64,000 nucleotides of DNA from Hydrolagus colliei (taxonomy: Eukaryota): contig CM068749.1 of assembly GCA_035084275.1 (NCBI GenBank), positions 15,686,001 to 15,750,000 of the forward strand. The letters run 5' to 3'. Each line of letters begins with the position of its first letter. Position 1 is the first letter of the stretch. A program made the translations under genes and the position numbers. The notes under the pieces were generated by a model. The model searched no databases and was not told the origin of the DNA. It was given only the letters and a program-made list of their open reading frames with translations. Of this stretch, positions 119 to 35,761 are shown one piece after another.

Positions 119-316
119 TGGAGTCCTGTAGCTCAGTGGTTAGAGCACTCACCTTGCAAACGAGAAATCTGGGTCTGATTCCAGGCAGGGTGAAACCTTG
201 GGCAAGTTTCCTTACTCCATATGTCTAATAATAATCTCTCCAAAAAAAATGGTCAATTCAATCCATAACTGTTTGTGGGACACTACTGTACGCAATTGAC
301 TGCTGTGTTCGCCACA
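119..316 (+). mobile_element. tRNA(Ala)-derived SINE, family A (SINE2-1_CM-like), 3'-truncated
   Basis: A box TAGCTCAGTGG, anticodon loop CTTGCAA, degenerate B box, and body GAAACCTTGGGCAAGTTTCCTTACTCCA shared with copies at 23988, 59927 and 62850. Confidence 0.9.
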
Positions 317-4887: not shown

Positions 4888-7800
4888 ACTTTGTGAATAT
4901 TCCAATTCCTTCTATTTAAATCTGTTCTCCCTTTCTTTGGTGGCAGAAGCTGTCATTCAAAACTTTAGCATTAGTGCAACATCCCCTAACCCCAAGTAAG
5001 AGAGGAATGAATGTGAGTTTGGTACAGTTTGACATTTCATTTTACAAAATATCTAAAATAGTAGCACAGAGGTTGCCTCTGGAATAAAATATTATGGAAG
5101 CTGGTGCTACCCTCAAATAGAGGTGTGTCAGGCTGACCATAGATTGACCACAATCCTCCATACCCATCCTCCATAATTCAGAAATATCTCTTGAATTTGG
5201 GGAATTATAGAAATAGTTTCAAAATGTGAGATCTGTATGTTAATAAAAGATCAAGACATTTCTTGTTACCTGCAGTCCATAAGATTAGCACATTTTGTGA
5301 TGTGAGCTTGCCCTGAAATAAAGTTTTTAATTAAACTTTTGGTATTAGAAGAAAGCATAGTTTAGTAATGTTATGTTTACAGTTATGTTTTGAAACTGTT
5401 TTGTTTTACTCTATCAAAAAGATCTAAATAATTAGAATTATTTTTAACGACAATAAATTGCATTTATGTAGCACCCTACCTGTAGGTTAGTGTTTCAGAG
5501 TCCTGGGAAAGCAGTTTAATATGCTTCCTCTAGTTCTTAACGATTTCAACCAGATAAGCTTAAGGAACTGGTTCTCTTTCTCTCAAGCACAATTTCTCTT
5601 TGAATTGATTTAAAGATTTCACTGTTTAATTGAGGTGTGTCTGCAAATTCTTAAATCTCTATTGATTTTTGAGTCTGGCATCATATCATCAGGATTCAAG
5701 AGCTTTATTTGAAAGAGTGTAAACTCGTCCAATTTTTAGCTTGAAATATTTTAAGGAAGTTTGATCTGCTGTGAACCTCACTAAATTTGGAATCCGATGG
5801 GGGAGCTTTTTTAGATGAAAGATGAAGACAAATTTTACTCTGTATTGCACGTTAACAACAATTCACTTTCATTTCTAACTCGGAAAAGGCTTTGTGTTTT
5901 GTAGTAGAACTAATTAGTGTAAAAGGGACTTTATTTGATGTATACAAAAGTGTATTCTTGAATCTGAAAGACCAGCATCTCCAGAAGGTCAGAGAAGATG
6001 AGTAAAATATAATTAATTGTATGCAAAGATCTCTTTCAATCCAGGGCAAGAATGCATTGAAGTAGGAAATATTAATCCAGTTTCTCTTGCCCAAATGCAA
6101 CTGAAAGTAATACGACATTACTCCCAAAGTACTGAAACAGATTAATGCATCAAGCCAGACTTGATCTAAAGTGGCAACCGCAACGTCAGTCTAATTGGGC
6201 CACAATAACTAATCCTTACCAAGTCGTCTTTATCTGTTGCTTAATAATATACTGTAGCAGTATTCAGTGGAGCTGGAGCTGTTTGGTGCATGGGCCAAGA
6301 CATAACCTCTATGATCTGCCATTCTCTTCTGTGAAACTTCAACTTGATCAATGGAGCACAGGATACCTGATTTATTTTTAGTTCAAATATATTATTGTGT
6401 GAAGCGTAGGTGTCACTGATTCCATCCACATTTTCAACAGAGATTGTGATTTATCTATTTTCTGAAAGGTTAAGGCAAATTATTTTAAAAAATTTTCTAA
6501 TAAAGTGTGTTCTCCACAAATTTTATTTATAACACTGTGAAACCGCCGAAAGTGATGATGTCAGAGTTTATGACTGTTGCTTATTACTTGAAGTAATGCA
6601 ATAGTGTTTTGCTCCTGAAAGCACACAGTAGACCCATGAGTCTTTTTTTAACATCCACACAATTAACTAGACTGAAACAGATAGGATTATGCTTCAAAAC
6701 ACAGATCCACGCTGATACCATCCCATTGGGTAATTTTCAACCTTGTTTAACTTTCGTGCTGCACATGATAATTATGGGTGAGAGAACACAAACAATTTCT
6801 GAAGAGAATCATTACCTGTGTGAAGTAACAATAATTGACTGACGTGCGAAATAAATTCTTAATAGTTAAGATAAGGTGTTTCCTCAGAAACCGTATGTCT
6901 CTTGAGAACCAATTTGCGGCTCCTGTTTGGAATCTTTGCCTTTCTGCTGCTCAGTTTCACAGTCCCACTTATTTCCTGTTCTCACTGTTTACAATGGCAA
7001 CTTGCACATTATTAATTGGTGCCAATTAATAATGCACCAGAACAGACATGACCCTATTATATAACTGTTCAAATCTAAATGAGCCGGATTGCCAACTTTT
7101 TCCTTTCTGGAGCATGAGTTTCTGTTGTGTGGCATGCAGGTGTATTACCATTTACCAGATGGTCTGTTTAACAAGAAATTAAATTAATTTTGAAACTGAC
7201 ATCTCTATAAAGAGTTATCTATACAATCTGGTGGTGGGACCTGTTGATTTCCTTTGCTGAATCAAATCAGGCTTGGCCAATATTCACACTTGGGCTTCCC
7301 TCAAAATACAAGTTATTGTTCTTGTCAAGTGCAGTTCCTGCTATGAGAGGAAGATGTTGCTTTGCTAGAAAAATAAATTGGTGAATTGCCACTTTGAGCT
7401 GCCTTTACAAATAGACCATATTGAATCTTTGGAAATGACCATCTTGCAGGATTGCAACAGCCATTTGTTGTTTGAAGAATATTTGAAATAACTACAGAGT
7501 AATATTAAATAACGTTATAACAGTATAATAACTAAACCCAATTTCTGACAATGCTCATTGTGTACTCTAGAACCCACAGCAACAGCCTCAGTGAATATTT
7601 ATTTATTTATAACCATTAGATCTAATTATTAAGTTAGAAGAGAATATGATCTAATAGGGAAGGTGATGGATCATTGGCAATGATGGGAATGAACAGATCC
7701 ATAATTAATGTTCATTTTCATATCTTGGCAGCTCAAGTTGAATGTGAGCTAAGGATGATCTAGTGCACTCTGGGTGTTAAGACTTTACTACCTAGGTGGC

Positions 7801-8217
7801 CATCTGTGCAGCATAAATGGGACTCAGGGAATGTGTGCAACATAAAATGAGCTTCTGACAATGCCAGAGAAATATATTTTTCGGAGCGGTGTGTTTCATA
7901 CCCGTGCAATATTAACCTAACTAATGCAGTTTGGATCCATTATACTGTAGCATAAACACAGCAGATGAGATTCAAAGATATTCAGTAGAAAATCAAGTGC
8001 AATTTGCACCTGTGAAGTATAAATATCTTGGGTGCAGATTACATTTGACTCCCACTTCTGAAGTCAGAAACTTACATTGAACCTTTTAAAAATATTATTA
8101 CAAAGTTGAAAGCACAGAATTTGAAAAAAAAAGTCCACTCTTTCAATTTCTTATTATTTTTTGTTTGAGGGTTAAATAAAGTAAAATACAGTACTCCAGT
8201 CATACCTACTTAACAGA

Positions 8218-8351
8218 AACGAAAAATAATGCAGAAGCTGGAAATCTGAAACAAAAACAAATTGCTGGGAACACTCAGCAGGTCAGGCAGCATCTATGGA
8301 GAAAGAAAAAGTGAGTCAATGTTTCGGGTCCACAACCCTTCGTCAGAACCA
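8218..8351 (-). mobile_element. Short Penelope-like retroelement insertion with 10-bp TSD
   Basis: Exact direct repeat ACTTAACAGA at 8208-8217 and 8352-8361; minus strand carries a hammerhead core followed by GATGCTGCCTGACCTGCTGAGT, which I recall as the terminal repeat of chondrichthyan Penelope-like elements. Confidence 0.8.
8314..8350 (-). ncRNA. Minimal type-I hammerhead ribozyme motif, probably inactivated by one CpG transition
   Basis: Minus strand reads GGUU-CUGACGA-A-GGGU(UGUGG)ACCC-GAAA-C-AUU-GACU: both catalytic boxes, a 4-bp stem II and a 4-bp stem I with wobbles. Confidence 0.7.
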
Positions 8352-8705
8352 ACTTAACAGATTTGCTTGGCTCGCAAGCCGCAATTCAAAAAACATTTTC
8401 AATCAATTTAAACAAATTGCTAAAGAAATTATTTCAAGAAAACAAAAATTCAGTTGGTAGCTCCATGGTAATTTTACTTCTCATAAATGGAGCATGACTG
8501 AACTCTGTATGTGAACGAACTGAGTGGAACCTAGAATCTCAACTATATTGGCTGAATTTAAAGCCAATGTTTCAACCTGAAAGTCTCATTATGGTTGCTG
8601 ATCTGTTTTCCAATGATTGCTAAAGCGGCCTAAATAAAATGAATTTGGACAAGGCTAATTGCCTCGCTAAATTGTAAAGCCACTAGAACCCTCAGCAGCT
8701 CAAAG

Positions 8706-8752
8706 AACAACAACAACAAAATTGCACTTACATAGCGCCTTTCACGTCGGGA
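8706..8752 (-). mobile_element. L2 LINE extreme 3' tail
   Basis: (AAC)n followed by TTGCACTTACATAGCGCCTTTCACGTCGGGA. Confidence 0.8.
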
Positions 8753-8789: not shown

Positions 8790-8960
8790 TTCGAGGTACC
8801 AACACCACCTCCAGCTGTGCCCCTTGCCATTATGGTTCTGAATTGTTTTGGATGCGCTTTGCATCACTGGACTGCACAAATCTTCCCAGAACATTGGGGA
8901 TACCCTGGAGACTGGAACTAAAAGTTGTGATCGGTGACCTTGAAACAACTGTGCATGTAT
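8790..8960 (+). mobile_element. Degenerate RTE-clade LINE ORF fragment
   Basis: Plus frame reads YGSELFW...LPRTLGIPW, resembling the RTE motif LLYGSETW...LRKILGIxW. Confidence 0.4.
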
Positions 8961-9257
8961 AAATCCGTTGAATTGGCTCCTCGAAATAAACATGACATGA
9001 AGTCCACACCACTCTTAGAGCTGTCAACAGTGATGAAGCGTTAGGCAGGGGATTTCCAATGATAAAGTGTGAGATGGATTCTGAACCCTTTTCAAACAGG
9101 TTTGATTTTTGAGGGTGATTTGCGTGGAAACAGGCGCTGTTTGTAAACCGTAAATGAGGACTGTGACTGCCAATCTTAATGAAGGGCATTTGCTGGATTT
9201 GTATTCTACAGCTGGTAACTGGTATCTGACAAAGTAGAGACTTCCTGTTTAATAATT

Positions 9258-9327
9258 CCCGCCCCCCTCCCCCCCCCCTCCCACCCGCCCCCACTCCCCC
9301 CCCCCTCCCACCCGCCCCCACTCCCCA
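9258..9327 (-). repeat. C-rich 26-27-bp tandem repeat (~2.6 units) with G-quadruplex potential on the minus strand
   Basis: Unit CCCGCCCCCACT(C)10TCCCA repeated; each unit contains a GGGGCGGG box on the minus strand. Confidence 0.85.
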
Positions 9328-10724
9328 CATATCCAAATGAAAAAGCTGCCAAATCTCTTTCTCATCCCTATAGTCTGTGCTTTTTGGCTGCACAGCTCCA
9401 ATCTAGCTTCAGGGCAAACCCGAGGTGCAAGACTAGCCGGCACTAGTTTTCTTGGGTGATGATAAGCAACAGCTGCTCAGATAGTCAGTTCATTTGGCTT
9501 CGGTGTCCAACCCCCTCCGCTTCTCTTTATAACAGTGTCTTGGAAGCTAACTTAAACAGCATGTTTTTATTTCCTGTCATTTGTGTGTAAGCGAAATTCA
9601 GTTTGTTAAACCCAGGAATAAGTCATTACTCACTCCATAATGTCTAATCCAATCTTTGTGTTATCTTAGGTCATTAATTAATGGGCTGCAATAGAAACTG
9701 TAGTTAGAATATGTTGACCATATATTTTGAAAACTTACAGATACTTTCCTGATGTTTATGGTAACTCTGTGCCTAATAAAAGCAAATGTGCTGTGTTTTA
9801 CTGTCACATACACCAACTCCCATTACTGTGGGAACTGTTTTCCCTATTTCCCTATTACACAATACACTTAAATCTCTATGAAGTCTTTAGCACAGGATAT
9901 GGAACATTCTTTTTCATGAAAGGTTTATAAAAAAAAGTGGTGAAATGATATTTAAACCATTTACTTGCATATTAACAATAAATCTGAATTGTGCTGAAAT
10001 CTGAACTAGCCTAGTGTAGTTATGAAAACATTCTTTGTATTTTGCAACCCCAAGAAAGTCTCCTCTGAACAAAAGTCATACAAGGCTATGAGGAAGTGCA
10101 TCCACCATCACTACCACAGCCTGACAAGAAAGAGCTTTACCTTTTACCTATCACAGCAGTAATTGTGGAATCAATATTGCACGTATTTCGCTAGTGAAGG
10201 GGAACAGATTCCTCTCCATAGCTGCCAAGCAACAAGCCTGTGTGTGTATATGTGTGTATGGGGTATCCTCGCAAACCATGATTAAAACCTTAAGTGCTAT
10301 AGAAAGAGAAAAGCAATCTAAACAAAACAAGCATTAAAATCTCTGGAATTGCTGCTGCCATAGTCAAAATACAGTCCACAAAGTGAAAACATAACGGCTA
10401 ACCAAATGTACATGATGTAGAATATAGATTAAAAAGTTTTGGACTTGCGTTTATTCAAGCCAGTAACATGGTTTTAGATTCCTGTGGCGAGAGATCCTGA
10501 AAGTTGGTAAAGTACTATCCTTGGTAGTGGGTGTTAAATACAGAGTCGCTACACTTACCAATATTTCCTATGAAACACTTTGCAAGGATTGTTATTATTT
10601 AATCATGATAAAGTCTCCACATTATAAGAACAAATAGCGAAGAGTGGTAATATTACTATTGTGATAGAATACCTTGACCTCTGTATAATTTCCTCCCTTT
10701 TGTTCTCACATTTTGTATCAACAG

Positions 10725-15053: not shown

Positions 15054-15623
15054 TTAGAAGATGTAAAACAATATTTCATATCTCCTCACTAGCCCCCCTG
15101 AAGGACAATTTGATGTATTTGCATTTACATTGGGACTTTTAGTTTGAGACTGTTTGACTTCCAAAGATCTATTGGAATTGCTTAGGTTACAATGGGTTCA
15201 TTGGGGATATGGTCAATTTGCTAGAATTTAGATGACAATGTGTACTGCATCAATCCCAGGCTTACATGGATAACAAGGCAGCTAATTGAAGTAGTGCTAA
15301 TAGATATGAAATGGCAATTTTGCTCAAAATGAGGGGGTGAATTGTATTGACTTAATGTAAAAGTGGGTCCTTAAGTTCAAAATAATTTTATGCCAAGGAA
15401 ATTAATAGCATCATTAAAGTGTGCATATAGAGATTCCAATTAACCTTTTGTTTACGTTCAACGCTTTATTCCCTGTCAAAAATCTTTTACTTTAATCGTA
15501 ACATGAGATATGCTGGTTTGAAGCTATTGAAAAGAGATTCAGAAAAGTACCAACTGTGGTTCTCTCATTGTCATTACAAACTATCATAAGGGATGCAAAA
15601 CCATTTGTCAATTGTTTAAAATT

Positions 15624-15946
15624 CAACAACAACAACAAAATTACACTTGTATAACACCTTTCATGTCAGAAGGACGTTCCAAGGCTCTGCACAGACATTG
15701 TTTAAGACCTGAACTGGGGTTAGCAACAGGGAGGGTGGAAGGAAAGGTGGGATTTGGGATGACCGATGGGATTGTCGAAGAAGAGGGTCTTGAGGCAGGA
15801 CTTGAAGGATGCCAGGGAGGGGGCGAGGTGGTTCGGGGGACGTGGAGCAGGCCGGAGTCTGCTGAACGGAGGAACGGGCAGGTTGATAGTGGGTTAGGAG
15901 GTCGCAGATGTAGAGTGAGGCAGTGGATGGCTTTGAATGTGAATTC
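15624..15946 (-). mobile_element. L2 LINE 3' end, internally deleted
   Basis: Minus ORF contains FKAIHCL...LRSADSGLLHVPRT (L2 ORF2 C-terminus); tail (CAA)n plus stem-loop. Confidence 0.9.
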
Positions 15947-16375
15947 CTCCCCAAGAAAATGCTCTAAGGAATGCAGGGAATAAAGCATTGAAATTGAACA
16001 GAGGAAAGGAATATGTGGTTTGGATAGGGTAATTCATGAGGGTGCTATGATCCTTTAACTTTTCTGAAAGAGCCATCTGTAGGGTTGTAGACAATACGAT
16101 TACGTCTCCTTTATGGCATTTTGAGTTTCAACTGTACAGTAAATGGGAATAAAGAAGTGCCAACTTTCAACCATATAATACTCCTAATGTTCAGTACTTA
16201 GTACAGTACAATCAAAGGTTAAAGCTATTCAATACTTTATTTCAAGTGAGTTAGATAAATGTTACCTAATAACAAATAGACCATCTGAGATGTATAATTT
16301 TAGAGCTTTGGCCAGACAGACAGGAGGCTGCTATTTATTAACAACATGATGTTAGGATCCGCCAAACTGTTTCAT

Positions 16376-29309: not shown

Positions 29310-29461
29310 CCCTTCTTACTCTTTCTTTCCTAGTCCTCTATCCTCCTATTGCTCTCTCTAGTCTACTTTTATCTTTAGTCTCCCGACCTGACTGTTCAGC
29401 GCTTTGGGATGTCCTCCTGACGTGAAAGGCGCTGTATAAGTGCAATTTTGTTGTTGTTGTT
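29310..29461 (+). mobile_element. L2 LINE 3' end
   Basis: Pyrimidine-rich UTR followed by GCGCTTTGGGATGTCCTCCTGACGTGAAAGGCGCTGTATAAGTGCAA(TTG)n. Confidence 0.85.
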
Positions 29462-32595: not shown

Positions 32596-32937
32596 CAGTC
32601 CCTCCAATGCATAAGTGTCATACATCCAAAATTAGAAAACAAACAAGTGTGGAACTAAAGTTTTGTTGAAGTGTTTCACTCGTTTGTGGAAGTAACAGTA
32701 AAACAAAAGTATGCTGTACTAATATTATTTCTTTCTGGGCATACAGAGGCAGTGGGGTTGTCAAAATGTCTCCAGGAACACTGAGTTACTGTTGCAAACC
32801 CACAGGAGCATTTCAATGGGAGCCCCATCTTCCCATTACACTACTAAGGTGTTTCTTAAATGAATTAAGCCATGGCCTCAGCAATTTTTCCTGGTAACCA
32901 ATCCAGCTCCAGTTGTTGATTACTCTCTGGGTTATCC

Positions 32938-33000
32938 ATCGCCTCGGGATGTCCTCCTAACACGAAACACACTATATAAGTGCAATTTGTTGTTGTTGTT
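32938..33000 (+). mobile_element. L2 3' tail
   Basis: CGCCTCGGGATGTCCTCC...CTATATAAGTGCAATTT(GTT)n. Confidence 0.75.
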
Positions 33001-34016
33001 TCTGTTGTGAAATACTCTCTGGTTTCTGTCCTAATGAGTCTCTTTGGAACCTGTGAAACTGTAATCTCTTGTTTGGCAGATCTAAAAGTATTAAAGGCCT
33101 GGCACCCCGCCCCCCCACCCCATTCACCAGCAATGCACCAGGTGTGACTTGACCAGAGGCATGTGCTTGACCTCTGGATTGCCTGTTGTTTTGTATTGAG
33201 GTGCTTAAGTGACACAGTCTTCTCCTGTATATGGTATGCAAGAAATGTTTTGGGATCAGCAAACAGATTTAGTAAAGTTACTTTCAGATTAAAGAGAACC
33301 ATTTACCGCTTTTATGTCCAGATAAATCCTTTATAAAATTGTAAAATGGAACATTCTTTTGTTTCGGTTCCAGAACATTCCTTTGGACATATTTGAGACC
33401 GTGAGCTGCGTTTGAGAGGTATGTACTACCGAGGTTTCTGGGTTTTTTTCCCTCATATATCTTCTTGACTTTTATTTCACTTCATTCCCTTGGTGGCAGT
33501 TGTTAAAATACGGGTTGCCTACCTTTGACTTGCTGGAAGAGAAGCAATATGTAAATTTGACTGCTTTCCTCAAACTGCCTCAAAGCCCAAGCTGCCTGTC
33601 TAGTAGCTGAACTCTGGCCAGTTTTGTTTGAGCCCTGGTCCCCCACTGATAGCATCAGCTCTGCGCCATTTCCAGTTTGTTCACAGCGGGGCATCTGTTT
33701 CTGCAGATTAGCTAGCATGTGAGCGCAGAGCCAGCCAAGCCATGCAGTTCACTTCATGTCATACAAACCCAATGCAAATTCTGCCTCTCCATTCACAAAA
33801 ACAGCAGCACAAAGGCCGTCAGGATAGCAGCACTGGTTTCACGCTGCATAAATATGAGAAGAAGAAGACTGTGAAACGCGGGCTGGGAGAGTACATTTAA
33901 CTGTCAGTTTCAGTTTGATGGGGCATTTGCATCTTTACATCAGCATGATTTTTATACAAGTTCCATATTAATGTCCAGGTGGTCTTGCAAACAGGGCTCG
34001 TTGTAGGTTAAAGGTA

Positions 34017-34420: not shown

Positions 34421-35079
34421 ATTTTATGTGGTTCCAAAGTAATTAGGAAAGCTTTCTAGACTCTATAATGCTCAGATGGATGGATGGTTTATAAGTGGAG
34501 AGTTTAACAACGTAGGAAAAGGTAAATGTTTGAAAAGCCTAACTGTTATAAAATGGAATGATGTAAACACATGGAACTGTTAGTCTGAATTGTTAAAATC
34601 TAATGTAAACAGGTGCAAGTTTAATTAAATAAAATATAACAAGTTTACATTGCAAAAACCAAATGCGTACTAGGATTAGAATGGATTTGTCATTCACTCT
34701 CAGAGACGCCAGACAAACTTGACAATGTACAGCATCCGCCACAAAGGCTTCAACTGCATGGGAAGGACGGTTGTCGGAAACAGAGTAGAGAAAAATAAGC
34801 TTGTTTTTCGTAGGTTCCCATCAAAACGTCCCATCTTTTGGAAAAAGAAAATGCAATTCCTTTTGGGGGAAAAATATTCTGCTTCACAAAATTTCACTGT
34901 TACTGCTAGCAGTGTGATTAATCAAATCCTTCCAGGGAAAGTAAGGCAAAGGAGAAAGGAAACAGAGCCCACATCGCCTCAGTAGCAGAACTGAAAACAT
35001 TCTGCTAAATCTATACAGCTTGTACTTTTTAGACTCCCAACTACTGCTGTGATTGCTGGACTGGTAGAAGTTGCAACCA

Positions 35080-35144
35080 CCTTGGGATATTCTCCCGACG
35101 TGAAAGGCGCTATACAAATGTAATTTTGTTGTTTTTGTTGTTGC
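35080..35144 (+). mobile_element. L2 3' tail
   Basis: CCTTGGGATATTCTCCCGACGTGAAAGGCGCTATACAAATGTAA(TTG)n. Confidence 0.82.
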
Positions 35145-35761
35145 ATGGCTGTAAGACATTAAGAATGAATGGCCGTGTTAATATGAGTTTGGTCTCCCAA
35201 CTGGAGATGGGAGATTGGTGTCTCACACTCCTGCTGAATGCAAGTTGCCCAGTCTCTGGAGCCAGCCCAGGTGTTGGTATCCTCTACATATTATTGGGAA
35301 GATTGGAAGTACAGTATAATAATAGGAGAAAAATGAACTAATACAAGGGTGATTTTTGATGTTTTCTCTGCTGTCACTCATTGTGTTCAATATTACAAAA
35401 CTAATCTTTCAGCACTAAATTGTTTATGTGTCTGTAAGTGAATTTTGGTGTTTGAAGGGGGTTCTAATGGAATGTTATGGGTTTTGTTTCCAGTGCACAG
35501 GGCATTCTGGTTTGATTTGCACAGAGGGTGCATAAATGTGAAAGATTGCTCTGATATATATACCACGCAATATATGATCAGCATGCTGGGAGAATGAGTA
35601 TCACTTTCATCCATGAAGATACCCATTCCTAGTATTCATTCAACTCCGAGTTTGGTTTGTGTCTGTATCTTACTTAAATATATTGTGTTCCTCAGTTCAT
35701 CTTTTGGTTCCTTTGCGAGGCGAATTCTAGCTTTATAGGACATAAATGTTAATTTTTTCTT

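What the first reader, a model, noticed from the sequence alone, without database searches (positions are those of the whole stretch)
8208..8361. TSD-bounded 134-bp mini-retroelement built around a hammerhead ribozyme
Seen: an exact 10-bp TSD (ACTTAACAGA) encloses a non-coding unit whose minus-strand 5' end starts about 5 nt before CUGACGA. Stem II (GGGU/ACCC), GAAAC, and a 3' GACU that pairs with the 5' GGUU (stem I) follow. Established: Penelope-like elements and retrozymes carry minimal type-I hammerheads with a loopless palindromic stem III (AACGUU) that act as dimers. Inference: this is a ribozyme-bearing short mobile unit, either a non-autonomous retrozyme-like family or a truncated PLE terminal repeat. 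AACAUU instead of AACGUU (position 8320) looks like an inactivating CpG decay, and the predicted cleavage site lies between 8318 and 8317.
Basis: partly seen in the sequence, partly recalled or inferred. Interest (0 to 1): 0.8.

Follow-up and report, generated by a model that had tools for sequence, protein, structure and literature searches.

The report
Dead Penelope-type retroelement stub with hammerhead
This is one old, solitary copy of a hugely abundant short repeat that carries the minimal hammerhead-ribozyme motif typical of Penelope-like retrotransposons, so it is a real but essentially ordinary piece of junk DNA.

Summary
An exact 10-bp repeat (8208-8217 and 8352-8361) brackets a 134-bp unit. 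Its minus strand starts with a complete minimal hammerhead descriptor, which matched once in the window and in 0 of 300 shuffles.

The 10-bp repeat is not rare by itself: the window holds 55 comparable pairs. It counts because it coincides with repeat boundaries found independently by laying contigs.

The unit belongs to a very large family shared by four coded organisms (26744, 24066, 11507 and 2962 contigs laid). Organism B has the same insertion at the same site.

Motif details match the published Penelope-like element (PLE) minimal hammerhead. The distance from the ribozyme to the 3' end, and the head-to-head inverted joints in other copies, match published PLE biology.

Most copies that reach 8349 break into unrelated flank there. 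This suggests a fixed 5' end, which I read, by inference, as the RNA start.

The A at 8320 is carried by 54-72% of family depth, so it is probably inherited and not a private decay.

There are no Rfam hits, no thermodynamic signal, no tandem copy and no RNA evidence. No polymerase-bearing parent could be fetched. This scan has already reported the same family elsewhere in this genome.

The parts
8208..8217 (.). Left copy of the target-site duplication (ACTTAACAGA)
   Evidence: Exact match to 8352-8361. It abuts the left limit of family homology; the longest laid pieces start at 8212-8226 (table 8).
8218..8351 (-). 134-bp insertion, a short Penelope-type terminal unit. The sense strand is the minus strand: 5' end at 8351/8349, 3' end at 8218.
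   Evidence: Summed depth runs from thousands to millions over 8208-8350, against about 47 in the flanks, in 4 of 4 runs laid (table 2). No second copy in the window. The left junction is present in organism B (record 17).
8314..8350 (-). Minimal type-I hammerhead motif. Helix I: 5' strand 8350-8347, 3' strand 8317-8314. CUGACGA 8346-8340. Bulged A 8339. Helix II 8338-8326. GAAA 8325-8322. C15.2 at 8321, A16.2 at 8320, U16.1 at 8319, U17 at 8318. Predicted cut between 8318 and 8317.
   Evidence: Read. The descriptor gives 1 hit in the window and 0 in 300 shuffles. The fold with stems I and II scores -7.1 against an MFE of -7.3 kcal/mol. No Rfam hammerhead hit.
8273..8294 (-). Most conserved core of the family, a 22-mer. 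It holds the only ATG-led open frame of the unit (ATG at 8293-8291).
   Evidence: No variant at 10% or more in any of the 4 runs, and the depth peak lies at 8276-8309 (tables 2 and 3). Unique in the window even with 3 mismatches allowed. The frame reads 27 codons to a stop in the flank, with an in-frame TAG just upstream. Coding is not shown.
8352..8361 (.). Right copy of the target-site duplication (ACTTAACAGA)
   Evidence: It lies 2 nt beyond the last family-homologous base, 8349 (table 7).

Best explanation
This is a dead, solitary insertion of the short terminal unit of a Penelope-like retrotransposon (PLE) family.

How it arose: the PLE enzyme nicked an AT-rich target with a stagger of about 10 bp. 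It began reverse transcription at an internal start site of the element's RNA, about 120 nt downstream of the start of hammerhead stem II. It then copied back through the minimal hammerhead to the 5' end of the RNA, 3-4 nt upstream of CUGACGA. The result is a 134-bp stub flanked by a duplication.

Shown: the motif, the duplication, the very large family, the shared insertion in a second organism, and that most copies reaching 8349 break into unrelated sequence there.

Inferred: that a PLE enzyme did the work, that 8349/8350 is the transcript start, and that 8218 is the internal reverse-transcription start.

The ribozyme here is a passenger and very probably inert. It stands alone, with no partner for the dimer that such loopless motifs need. 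C15.2 faces A16.2. Helix I is 3-4 bp with wobbles.
For: 1. The motif matches each feature that Cervera and de la Pena 2014 (PMC4209133, whole text read) list for PLE minimal hammerheads.
- There is a G10.1-C11.1 pair (8338/8326).
- Helix I is short, 4 bp.
- There is no helix III loop.
- Positions 15.2/16.2 are palindromic C-G in 28-46% of family depth.
- The same paper says most such motifs are solitary and 'probably related to truncated PLEs'.

2. Non-randomness: the descriptor gives 1 hit against 0 in 300 shuffles.

3. Family size: 26744, 24066, 11507 and 2962 contigs were laid in runs X1, X7, X8 and X12.

4. Geometry: in the Anolis Poseidon element the ORF starts at stem II and reverse transcription starts 111-118 nt into it (PMC11167929, main text read). 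Here the distance from the start of stem II (8338) to the 3' end (8218) is 121 nt.

5. Inverted copies: 'opposite strands' joints link a variable point (8259, 8300-8309) to a fixed point (8346-8349). The 8309-to-8349 joint is seen in 10, 7 and 3 contigs of X1, X7 and X8. This fits the inverted 5'-truncated copy abutting the 5' end described for PLEs (PMC8557442, passages). It also fits nicking and extension of both strands.

6. Fixed 5' end:
- 446 (X1) and 342 (X7) contigs have loose ends behind 8349. Their consensus agreement is 0.38 and 0.36.
- True random flanks at the start of the neighbouring SINE-like repeat (about 8706-8752) give 0.33-0.36. A homologous continuation at 8752 gives 0.52-0.53 in the same two runs (table 7).
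- If truncation were random, copies reaching 8349 would nearly all run on.

7. Not a Pol III SINE: there are three runs of five Ts on the sense strand. There is no tRNA-like signal here.

8. Age: organism B's contig crosses the left junction with 12 differences and 4 gaps over 453 nt (record 17).

9. A fly Penelope has a LINE-like internal promoter. Its start site lies 46 nt upstream of a 75-nt intron (PMC2377424, passages). That intron ends at the 5' end of hammerhead helix I. A transcript start just upstream of the ribozyme therefore has precedent.
Against: - The metagenome scan gave only 8 chance hits in DNA of 60-67% G+C. The viral scan gave 0. The link to PLEs therefore rests on resemblance.
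- No Rfam hammerhead model matches, even at E up to 10 in a 361-nt search.
- Folding gives no signal: z = +0.61 for the 134 nt and +0.57 for the 42 nt.
- Family figures are depth-weighted, come from assembled contigs at 80% likeness or more, and show only the best-supported rows (903 loose ends and 92 joints are hidden).
- Any copy longer than this one is clipped at 8349 by construction. The first loose letters after 8349 (TGRGGYAT) show that a minority does run on.
- The depth peak is in the middle (8276-8309), not at the 3' end as simple 5' truncation predicts. This may reflect conservation and not copy number.
- No covariation could be counted, because no individual copies were available.
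- Apart from the 8320 split noted above, the only variants of 10% or more in 8310-8349 are at the 8325/8326 CpG, 9-15% in each direction.
Confidence: 0.72

Rival explanations
1. It is a self-propagating, non-autonomous short family, SINE-like in lifestyle. The 134-bp unit is itself transcribed from an internal Pol II promoter and is copied again and again by PLE enzymes. It would not be only a by-product of full-length PLE transcripts.
For: - The 5' end is fixed in most copies, and the copy numbers are very large.
- The fly Penelope promoter is internal and LINE-like, so a copy that starts at the transcript start could keep it (PMC2377424).
- At least 10 separate X1 contigs at about single-copy depth share the identical 8309-to-8349 inverted joint. 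This looks like amplification of a structured master copy.
- A 2026 preprint argues that vertebrate hammerhead repeats are non-autonomous PLE derivatives (10.64898/2026.07.22.740005; abstract, Results part 1 and passages read).
Against: - No promoter was shown.
- No discrete small RNA was seen. The one run guessed to be RNA (X12) shows the element inside contigs up to 1757 nt long and may in fact be DNA.
- Subfamily structure could not be examined without individual copies.
Confidence: 0.17
2. It is an ordinary, randomly 5'-truncated PLE copy. Its end near the ribozyme is a coincidence and there is no preferred start.
For: - Heavy 5' truncation is the rule for PLEs (PMC8557442; PMC4209133).
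- Some copies do continue beyond 8349 (table 7 first letters; table 5c X7 8309-to-8288).
- The clip position at 8349 is partly imposed by this copy's own end.
Against: - Loose-end agreement behind 8349 is near the random-flank baseline (0.36-0.38 against 0.33-0.36), not near the value for a homologous continuation (0.52-0.53).
- The inverted joints always use 8346-8349 on one side.
- An earlier follow-up on other DNA of this genome noted the same common start. That is a lead, not independent evidence.
Confidence: 0.07
3. It is a non-LTR retrozyme monomer: a tandem-repeat element that spreads through self-cleaved circular RNA.
For: - It has a type-I hammerhead and low G+C, and non-LTR retrozymes have duplications longer than 4 bp (PMC7229834, passages).
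- Solitary 'monomers' of retrozyme families exist in vertebrates.
Against: - There is no tandem partner in 64 kb.
- No head-to-tail joint of this element is among the 15 best-supported joints shown, of 107. Only a few single-locus 'back' joints with inserted letters appear in table 5c.
- The ribozyme is the minimal PLE type, without helix III or the loop-loop contacts that define retrozyme hammerheads.
- The unit's ends are not at the cleavage site.
Confidence: 0.03
4. It is a chance hammerhead-like string inside an unrelated repeat, such as a LINE tail or another SINE.
For: - The loose motif alone is expected 0.91 times per window.
- There is no Rfam hit and no folding signal.
Against: - The full descriptor hits 0 of 300 shuffles.
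- The core boxes show no variant at 10% or more across the family, except at one CpG.
- Unsearched-for details match the published PLE motif: the extra nucleotide after A9, the G10.1-C11.1 pair and the palindromic 15.2/16.2 positions.
Confidence: 0.01

Closest known systems
Minimal hammerheads (min-HHR) of metazoan Penelope-like elements (Cervera and de la Pena 2014, PMC4209133)
   Same: - Type-I topology with no helix III loop.
- An extra unpaired nucleotide between A9 and 10.1.
- A G10.1-C11.1 pair.
- A 4-bp helix I.
- A palindromic C-G at 15.2/16.2 in many family members.
- Thousands of solitary copies per genome.
- Pairs on opposite strands.
   Different: - Helix II is 5 bp, against 6-8 bp in the described fluke and fly families.
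- This copy has C facing A at 15.2/16.2.
- No flanking polymerase gene was seen here.
- Whether this exact family is in that paper's supplementary alignments could not be checked, because supplements are closed.
Poseidon element PAc of Anolis carolinensis (Frangieh et al. 2024, PMC11167929)
   Same: - The hammerhead sits at the junction of the terminal repeat and the gene.
- Reverse transcription starts internally, 111-118 nt after the start of stem II. Here the distance from the start of stem II to the 3' end is 121 nt.
- The target is AT-rich.
- Both strands are extended, which would give inverted copies.
- The ribozyme is not needed for insertion.
   Different: - In PAc the gene's start codon lies at stem II. 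Here the only ATG-led frame starts 24 nt after the cut site and runs 27 codons.
- No biochemical data exist for this family.
- Short run-off units with a fixed 5' end are not described in the sections I read.
Non-LTR retrozymes of animals (Cervera and de la Pena 2020, PMC7229834; Li et al. 2026 preprint)
   Same: - Small and non-coding, with low G+C.
- A type-I hammerhead.
- Thought to depend on PLE enzymes.
- Solitary monomers occur.
   Different: Retrozymes are tandem repeats of 150-450 bp. They carry canonical hammerheads with loop-loop contacts and give circular RNA. This unit is solitary, carries a minimal motif, and does not end at the cleavage site.
Schistosome SINE-like hammerhead elements (as summarised in PMC6765202, passages)
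   Same: A short interspersed retroposon with a hammerhead near its 5' end.
   Different: Those carry a promoter followed by a canonical, active hammerhead. This unit has T-runs that would stop Pol III, and it has a minimal motif.

Membership tests
PLE minimal hammerhead (min-HHR) | Core boxes CUGANGA and GAAA in type-I order, with the N-U-H cleavage triplet directly after a loopless helix III | tested here: met
   Positions 8346-8340, 8325-8322 and 8320-8318. The descriptor hits once in the window and in 0 of 300 shuffles.
PLE minimal hammerhead (min-HHR) | [quoted passage not shown] | tested here: met
   A8339 is the extra nucleotide. G8338 pairs with C8326. The feature list comes from PMC4209133.
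PLE minimal hammerhead (min-HHR) | Palindromic 15.2/16.2 positions that allow a dimeric helix III | tested here: not met
   This copy has C8321 facing A8320. In the family, 28-46% of depth has the pairing letter.
PLE minimal hammerhead (min-HHR) | Compensatory changes in helices I and II across family members | not testable with these tools
   No individual copies could be fetched. Only one wobble-preserving change was seen: U8334 where two loose-end consensus strings have the pairing C.
PLE minimal hammerhead (min-HHR) | Self-cleavage as a dimer or with the element's protein | not testable with these tools
   This is a bench assay. The native homodimer fold shows no helix III pairs.
Penelope-like element (insertion product) | Derives from an element that encodes a reverse transcriptase plus a GIY-YIG endonuclease | not testable with these tools
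   None of the 26 ORFs of 90 aa or more looked like a polymerase by eye; none was scanned against Pfam.
Penelope-like element (insertion product) | 5'-truncated or short copies that keep the hammerhead, have no poly(A) tail, and are flanked by a duplication | tested here: met
   The 3' end reads ...UUUUUCGUU with no A-tail or microsatellite. A 10-bp duplication flanks the unit.
Penelope-like element (insertion product) | An inverted 5'-truncated copy often abuts the 5' end | tested here: inconclusive
   Not in this copy. In the family, 9 of the 15 joints shown link 8300-8309 to 8342-8349 on opposite strands. The sequences of those contigs were not visible.
Non-LTR retrozyme | Head-to-tail tandem repeats | tested here: not met
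   One copy in 64 kb. None of the 15 joints shown is a head-to-tail joint of this unit; 92 further joints are hidden.
Non-LTR retrozyme | Canonical type-I hammerhead with helix III and loop 1 - loop 2 contacts | tested here: not met
   There is no helix III and no loop 1. No Rfam hammerhead model hits at E up to 10.
Non-LTR retrozyme | Circular RNA of unit length | not testable with these tools
   Only assembled contigs were laid, and the run labelled 'RNA?' is a guess.
tRNA-derived (Pol III) SINE | tRNA-like head, and no internal Pol III terminators | tested here: not met
   No tRNA or tRNA-like hit in 8100-8460. There are three runs of five Ts on the sense strand.

The most novel reading that the evidence does not exclude
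The short hammerhead units of this genome are not random truncations. They are a defined product: the stretch between the element's transcript start (an initiator-like YYCA|GUU, 3-4 nt before CUGACGA) and its first internal reverse-transcription start site. Each such unit would be a run-off cDNA of the RNA leader. That would make internal initiation, known so far from one lizard element in vitro, the main source of tens of thousands of insertions in a vertebrate genome.

In the recurrent head-to-head form (the 8309-to-8349 joint), the two arms would pair and lengthen the 3-bp helix I. The minimal ribozyme would then sit at the tip of a long hairpin, which might make it active without a dimer.
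Probability: 0.25. Interest if true: 0.5.

Novelty: new member of a known kind. Interest (0 to 1): 0.22.

Why it matters
As it stands, this is one more solitary minimal hammerhead of the kind known since 2014 to litter fish, amphibian and reptile genomes. It has no sign of present function, and this scan has already flagged many copies in the same genome.

Two things give it limited value. First, the size of the family: tens of thousands of contigs in each of three organisms. Second, the hint of a fixed 5' end. If that end is the transcript start and the 3' end is the internal priming site, the copies are a natural record of how Penelope-like enzymes choose their template ends. That mechanism has been studied in vitro for only one element.

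Tried and rejected
Fetching other copies
- The viral-contig scan with the conserved 22-mer found 0.
- The metagenome-contig scan with a 21-mer found 8 loci. All have 60-67% G+C and match only the 21-mer, so they are chance bacterial hits.
- As a result I made no alignment, no covariation count and no covariance model.

Rfam
- The gathering search of the whole window found only a tRNA-like hit at 122-193.
- The E-value search of 8100-8460 found four weak, irrelevant hits and no hammerhead.

Thermodynamics
- There is no signal.
- The two-stem hammerhead fold lies within 0.2 kcal/mol of the MFE, but helix III never forms. The native homodimer swaps stems I and II instead.

Linking the unit to a PLE gene start
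- The only ATG-led frame has 27 codons. That is below the 30-aa minimum of the protein searches, so I did not search with it.

Other readings
- The 'skips' joints from 8259, 8302 or 8349 to 8706 first suggested that 8706-8752 belongs to the same element. I rejected this. Positions 8706-8752 are the 5' start of a different abundant repeat. The joined sides are only 18-24 letters long. The 356 bp between are single-copy (table 2).
- Codon-position bias among the 8 variable sites of the short frame: 4 of 8 are third positions, which is uninformative (my count).
- Variability of the ribozyme part against the rest: 3 variable sites in 40 nt against 11 in 92 nt, no clear difference (my count).

Literature
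- A full-text search for a 16-mer of the core found 0 papers.
- Lunse et al. (PMC5785218) is not held. I know it only from the title and a review's summary.
- Supplements were closed. The supplementary alignments of PMC4209133 and the tables of the 2026 preprint may already contain this family or its host group.

Organism
- I recall that the neighbouring repeat looks like an elasmobranch SINE. This is memory, not tested, and no conclusion rests on it.
- The initiator consensus I compare with (BBCA+1BW) is also recalled.

Full report
1. WHAT IS IN THE SEQUENCE

The window has 37% G+C and a CpG observed/expected ratio of 0.33, which is vertebrate-like.

ACTTAACAGA stands at 8208-8217 and at 8352-8361, and 134 bp lie between the two copies. 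Read on the minus strand, the unit starts as follows:
- UGGUU.
- CUGACGA (8346-8340).
- One extra A (8339).
- A 5-bp stem II, GGGUU/GACCC, closed by G8338-C8326, with a GUG loop.
- GAAA (8325-8322).
- C8321, A8320, U8319 and U8318.
- GACU (8317-8314), which pairs back to GGUU (8350-8347) with two wobbles.

The remaining 96 nt are T-rich, with three runs of five Ts. They hold a 22-mer (8273-8294) that turns out to be the family's most conserved part.

2. IS IT MORE THAN CHANCE?

The two core boxes at a suitable distance are not significant: 0.91 are expected per window. A descriptor that also asks for the G-C-closed stem II, an optional single bulge, the U-H triplet and a helix I of at least 3 bp hits only this place. 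It hits none of 300 dinucleotide shuffles.

The 10-bp repeat alone is also not significant. The window holds 85 such pairs at 60-400 bp spacing, 55 of them not low-complexity.

What makes it a target-site duplication is that it sits at the edges of a repeat whose limits were found independently:
- Summed depth rises from about 47 in the flanks to between 3.4e5 and 3.3e6 inside 8208-8343 in run X1, with similar profiles in X7, X8 and X12.
- The longest laid pieces start at 8212-8226.
- 20 of the 27 listed pieces on the element end at 8345-8350.
- My arithmetic puts a chance 10-mer at those edges at about 2e-4.

Family homology stops at 8349. So 8350-8351 may be extra letters, or the duplication may be 13 bp with one mismatch.

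3. THE FAMILY

All 4 runs laid hold it: 26744, 24066, 11507 and 2962 contigs for coded organisms A, B, C and D.

Organism B's 1563-nt contig (record 17) covers 7800-8252 with 12 differences and 4 gaps. It crosses the left junction, so the insertion predates the split of A and B. Nothing can be said about an empty site in organism C, which covered only 7886-8022.

Listed copies differ from this one by about 10-15% (table 8).

Within 8310-8349 only three positions vary at 10% or more, and all are CpG positions. At 8325 and 8326 the variants take 11-15% and 9-14%, symmetric as post-insertion decay should be. At 8320 the + strand reads C in 41%, 46%, 28% and 34% of depth. The opposite-strand decay at 8321 is not listed in any run.

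That asymmetry suggests the A at 16.2 marks a large subfamily and was inherited, not acquired by this copy. A family half of whose members carry a mismatch in the only helix III pair fits the published finding that hammerhead mutants insert normally.

No covariation analysis was possible.

4. WHY PENELOPE-LIKE

Cervera and de la Pena (PMC4209133) list the unsearched-for hallmarks of PLE minimal hammerheads:
- A nucleotide between 9 and 10.1.
- G10.1-C11.1.
- Palindromic 15.2/16.2.
- A short helix I.
- Thousands of solitary copies.
- Pairs on opposite strands.

All are seen here or in the family, except that this copy's 15.2/16.2 positions do not pair.

Frangieh et al. (PMC11167929) place the lizard element's gene start at stem II. 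They place the internal reverse-transcription start 111-118 nt further on. Here the distance from the start of stem II to the 3' end is 121 nt. They also show that both target strands are nicked and extended.

Craig et al. (PMC8557442) describe an inverted 5'-truncated copy abutting the 5' end. One search shows that pattern. Nine of the 15 joints shown link a variable point (8300-8309) on one strand to 8342-8349 on the other, and a tenth links 8259 to 8349.

The link is still by resemblance. No parent with a polymerase gene could be fetched.

5. THE 5' END

Because this copy stops at 8349-8351, every longer copy is clipped there too. If truncation were random, nearly all copies reaching 8349 would run on into shared sequence.

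Instead, the 446 (X1) and 342 (X7) loose ends behind 8349 agree at only 0.38 and 0.36. True flanks score 0.33-0.36. A genuine continuation at 8752 scores 0.52-0.53 in the same two runs (table 7). By rough interpolation about one copy in six runs on. Their first letters give an upstream ...YYCA before G8349, and one X7 contig shows this directly (table 5c).

So most copies start at the same place. An earlier follow-up on other DNA of this genome said the same (s1-138833). I treat that as a lead that my data partly confirm.

My reading, which is inference, is that 8349/8350 is the transcript start. The upstream letters resemble an initiator (recalled consensus). A fly Penelope has a LINE-like internal promoter with its start site shortly upstream of the ribozyme. 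The unit would then be the run-off cDNA from the first internal priming site to the RNA's 5' end.

6. WHAT IT DOES NOW

Very probably nothing.
- It is solitary, so it has no dimer partner.
- Helix III cannot form: the A15.1-U16.1 pairing probability is 0.
- Helix I is 3 bp inside the family limits.
- Folding energies are no better than shuffles.
- There is no evidence of a discrete RNA. The run guessed to be RNA shows the element inside longer contigs.

7. COMPARISON AND NOVELTY

It works like, and most likely is, a PLE terminal stub with a minimal hammerhead, which is a known kind.
- It fails two defining features of non-LTR retrozymes, tandem arrangement and a canonical ribozyme.
- It fails the Pol III SINE features.
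- A text search found no paper that prints the core sequence.
- Supplements that might show the family were closed.
- The scan holds 180 notes with the word 'hammerhead' in this genome, so this is a repeat find.

8. VERDICT

I class it as a new member of a known kind, with low interest. The fixed 5' end and the recurrent head-to-head form are worth one genome-wide tabulation.

Noticed in passing
window 8706-8752 (+): This is a 47-bp 5' fragment of a second, equally abundant repeat. It starts after an AACAAC run and reads TTGCACTTACATAGCGCCTTTCACG. Summed depth is up to 2.5e6, and other copies continue beyond 8752 with a shared sequence. A second copy lies at 29421-29445 on the minus strand with 2 mismatches. 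It is cut off on the 3' side, which is unusual for a retroposon.
   Followed up: partly
family level, joints 8309-to-8349 and neighbours (table 5): Many separate loci in three organisms share the same head-to-head junction. An antisense copy ending at about 8305-8309 is joined directly to a sense copy starting at 8349. The two arms would pair in RNA and put the hammerhead at the tip of a long hairpin, which would lengthen helix I. First-stage notes from other windows describe such palindromic units. The contig sequences were not visible.
   Followed up: partly
window 122-193 (+): A 72-nt tRNA-like sequence scores 36.2 bits with the Rfam tRNA model, above gathering. ARAGORN does not call it. 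It is probably the head of a tRNA-derived SINE or a decayed tRNA gene.
   Followed up: no
window 8830-9393 (-): A 187-aa ORF contains a repeated GAGGRGGG stretch. It looks like a low-complexity artefact and not a gene.
   Followed up: no
window 15612-15988, 32865-33302, 34884-35159: ORF translations here begin or end with runs such as QQQQQNYTCITPF, TTTTNCTYIV and TTKTTKLHLYSAF. They look like further copies of the AACAAC-headed repeat seen at 8706. They were judged by eye only.
   Followed up: no
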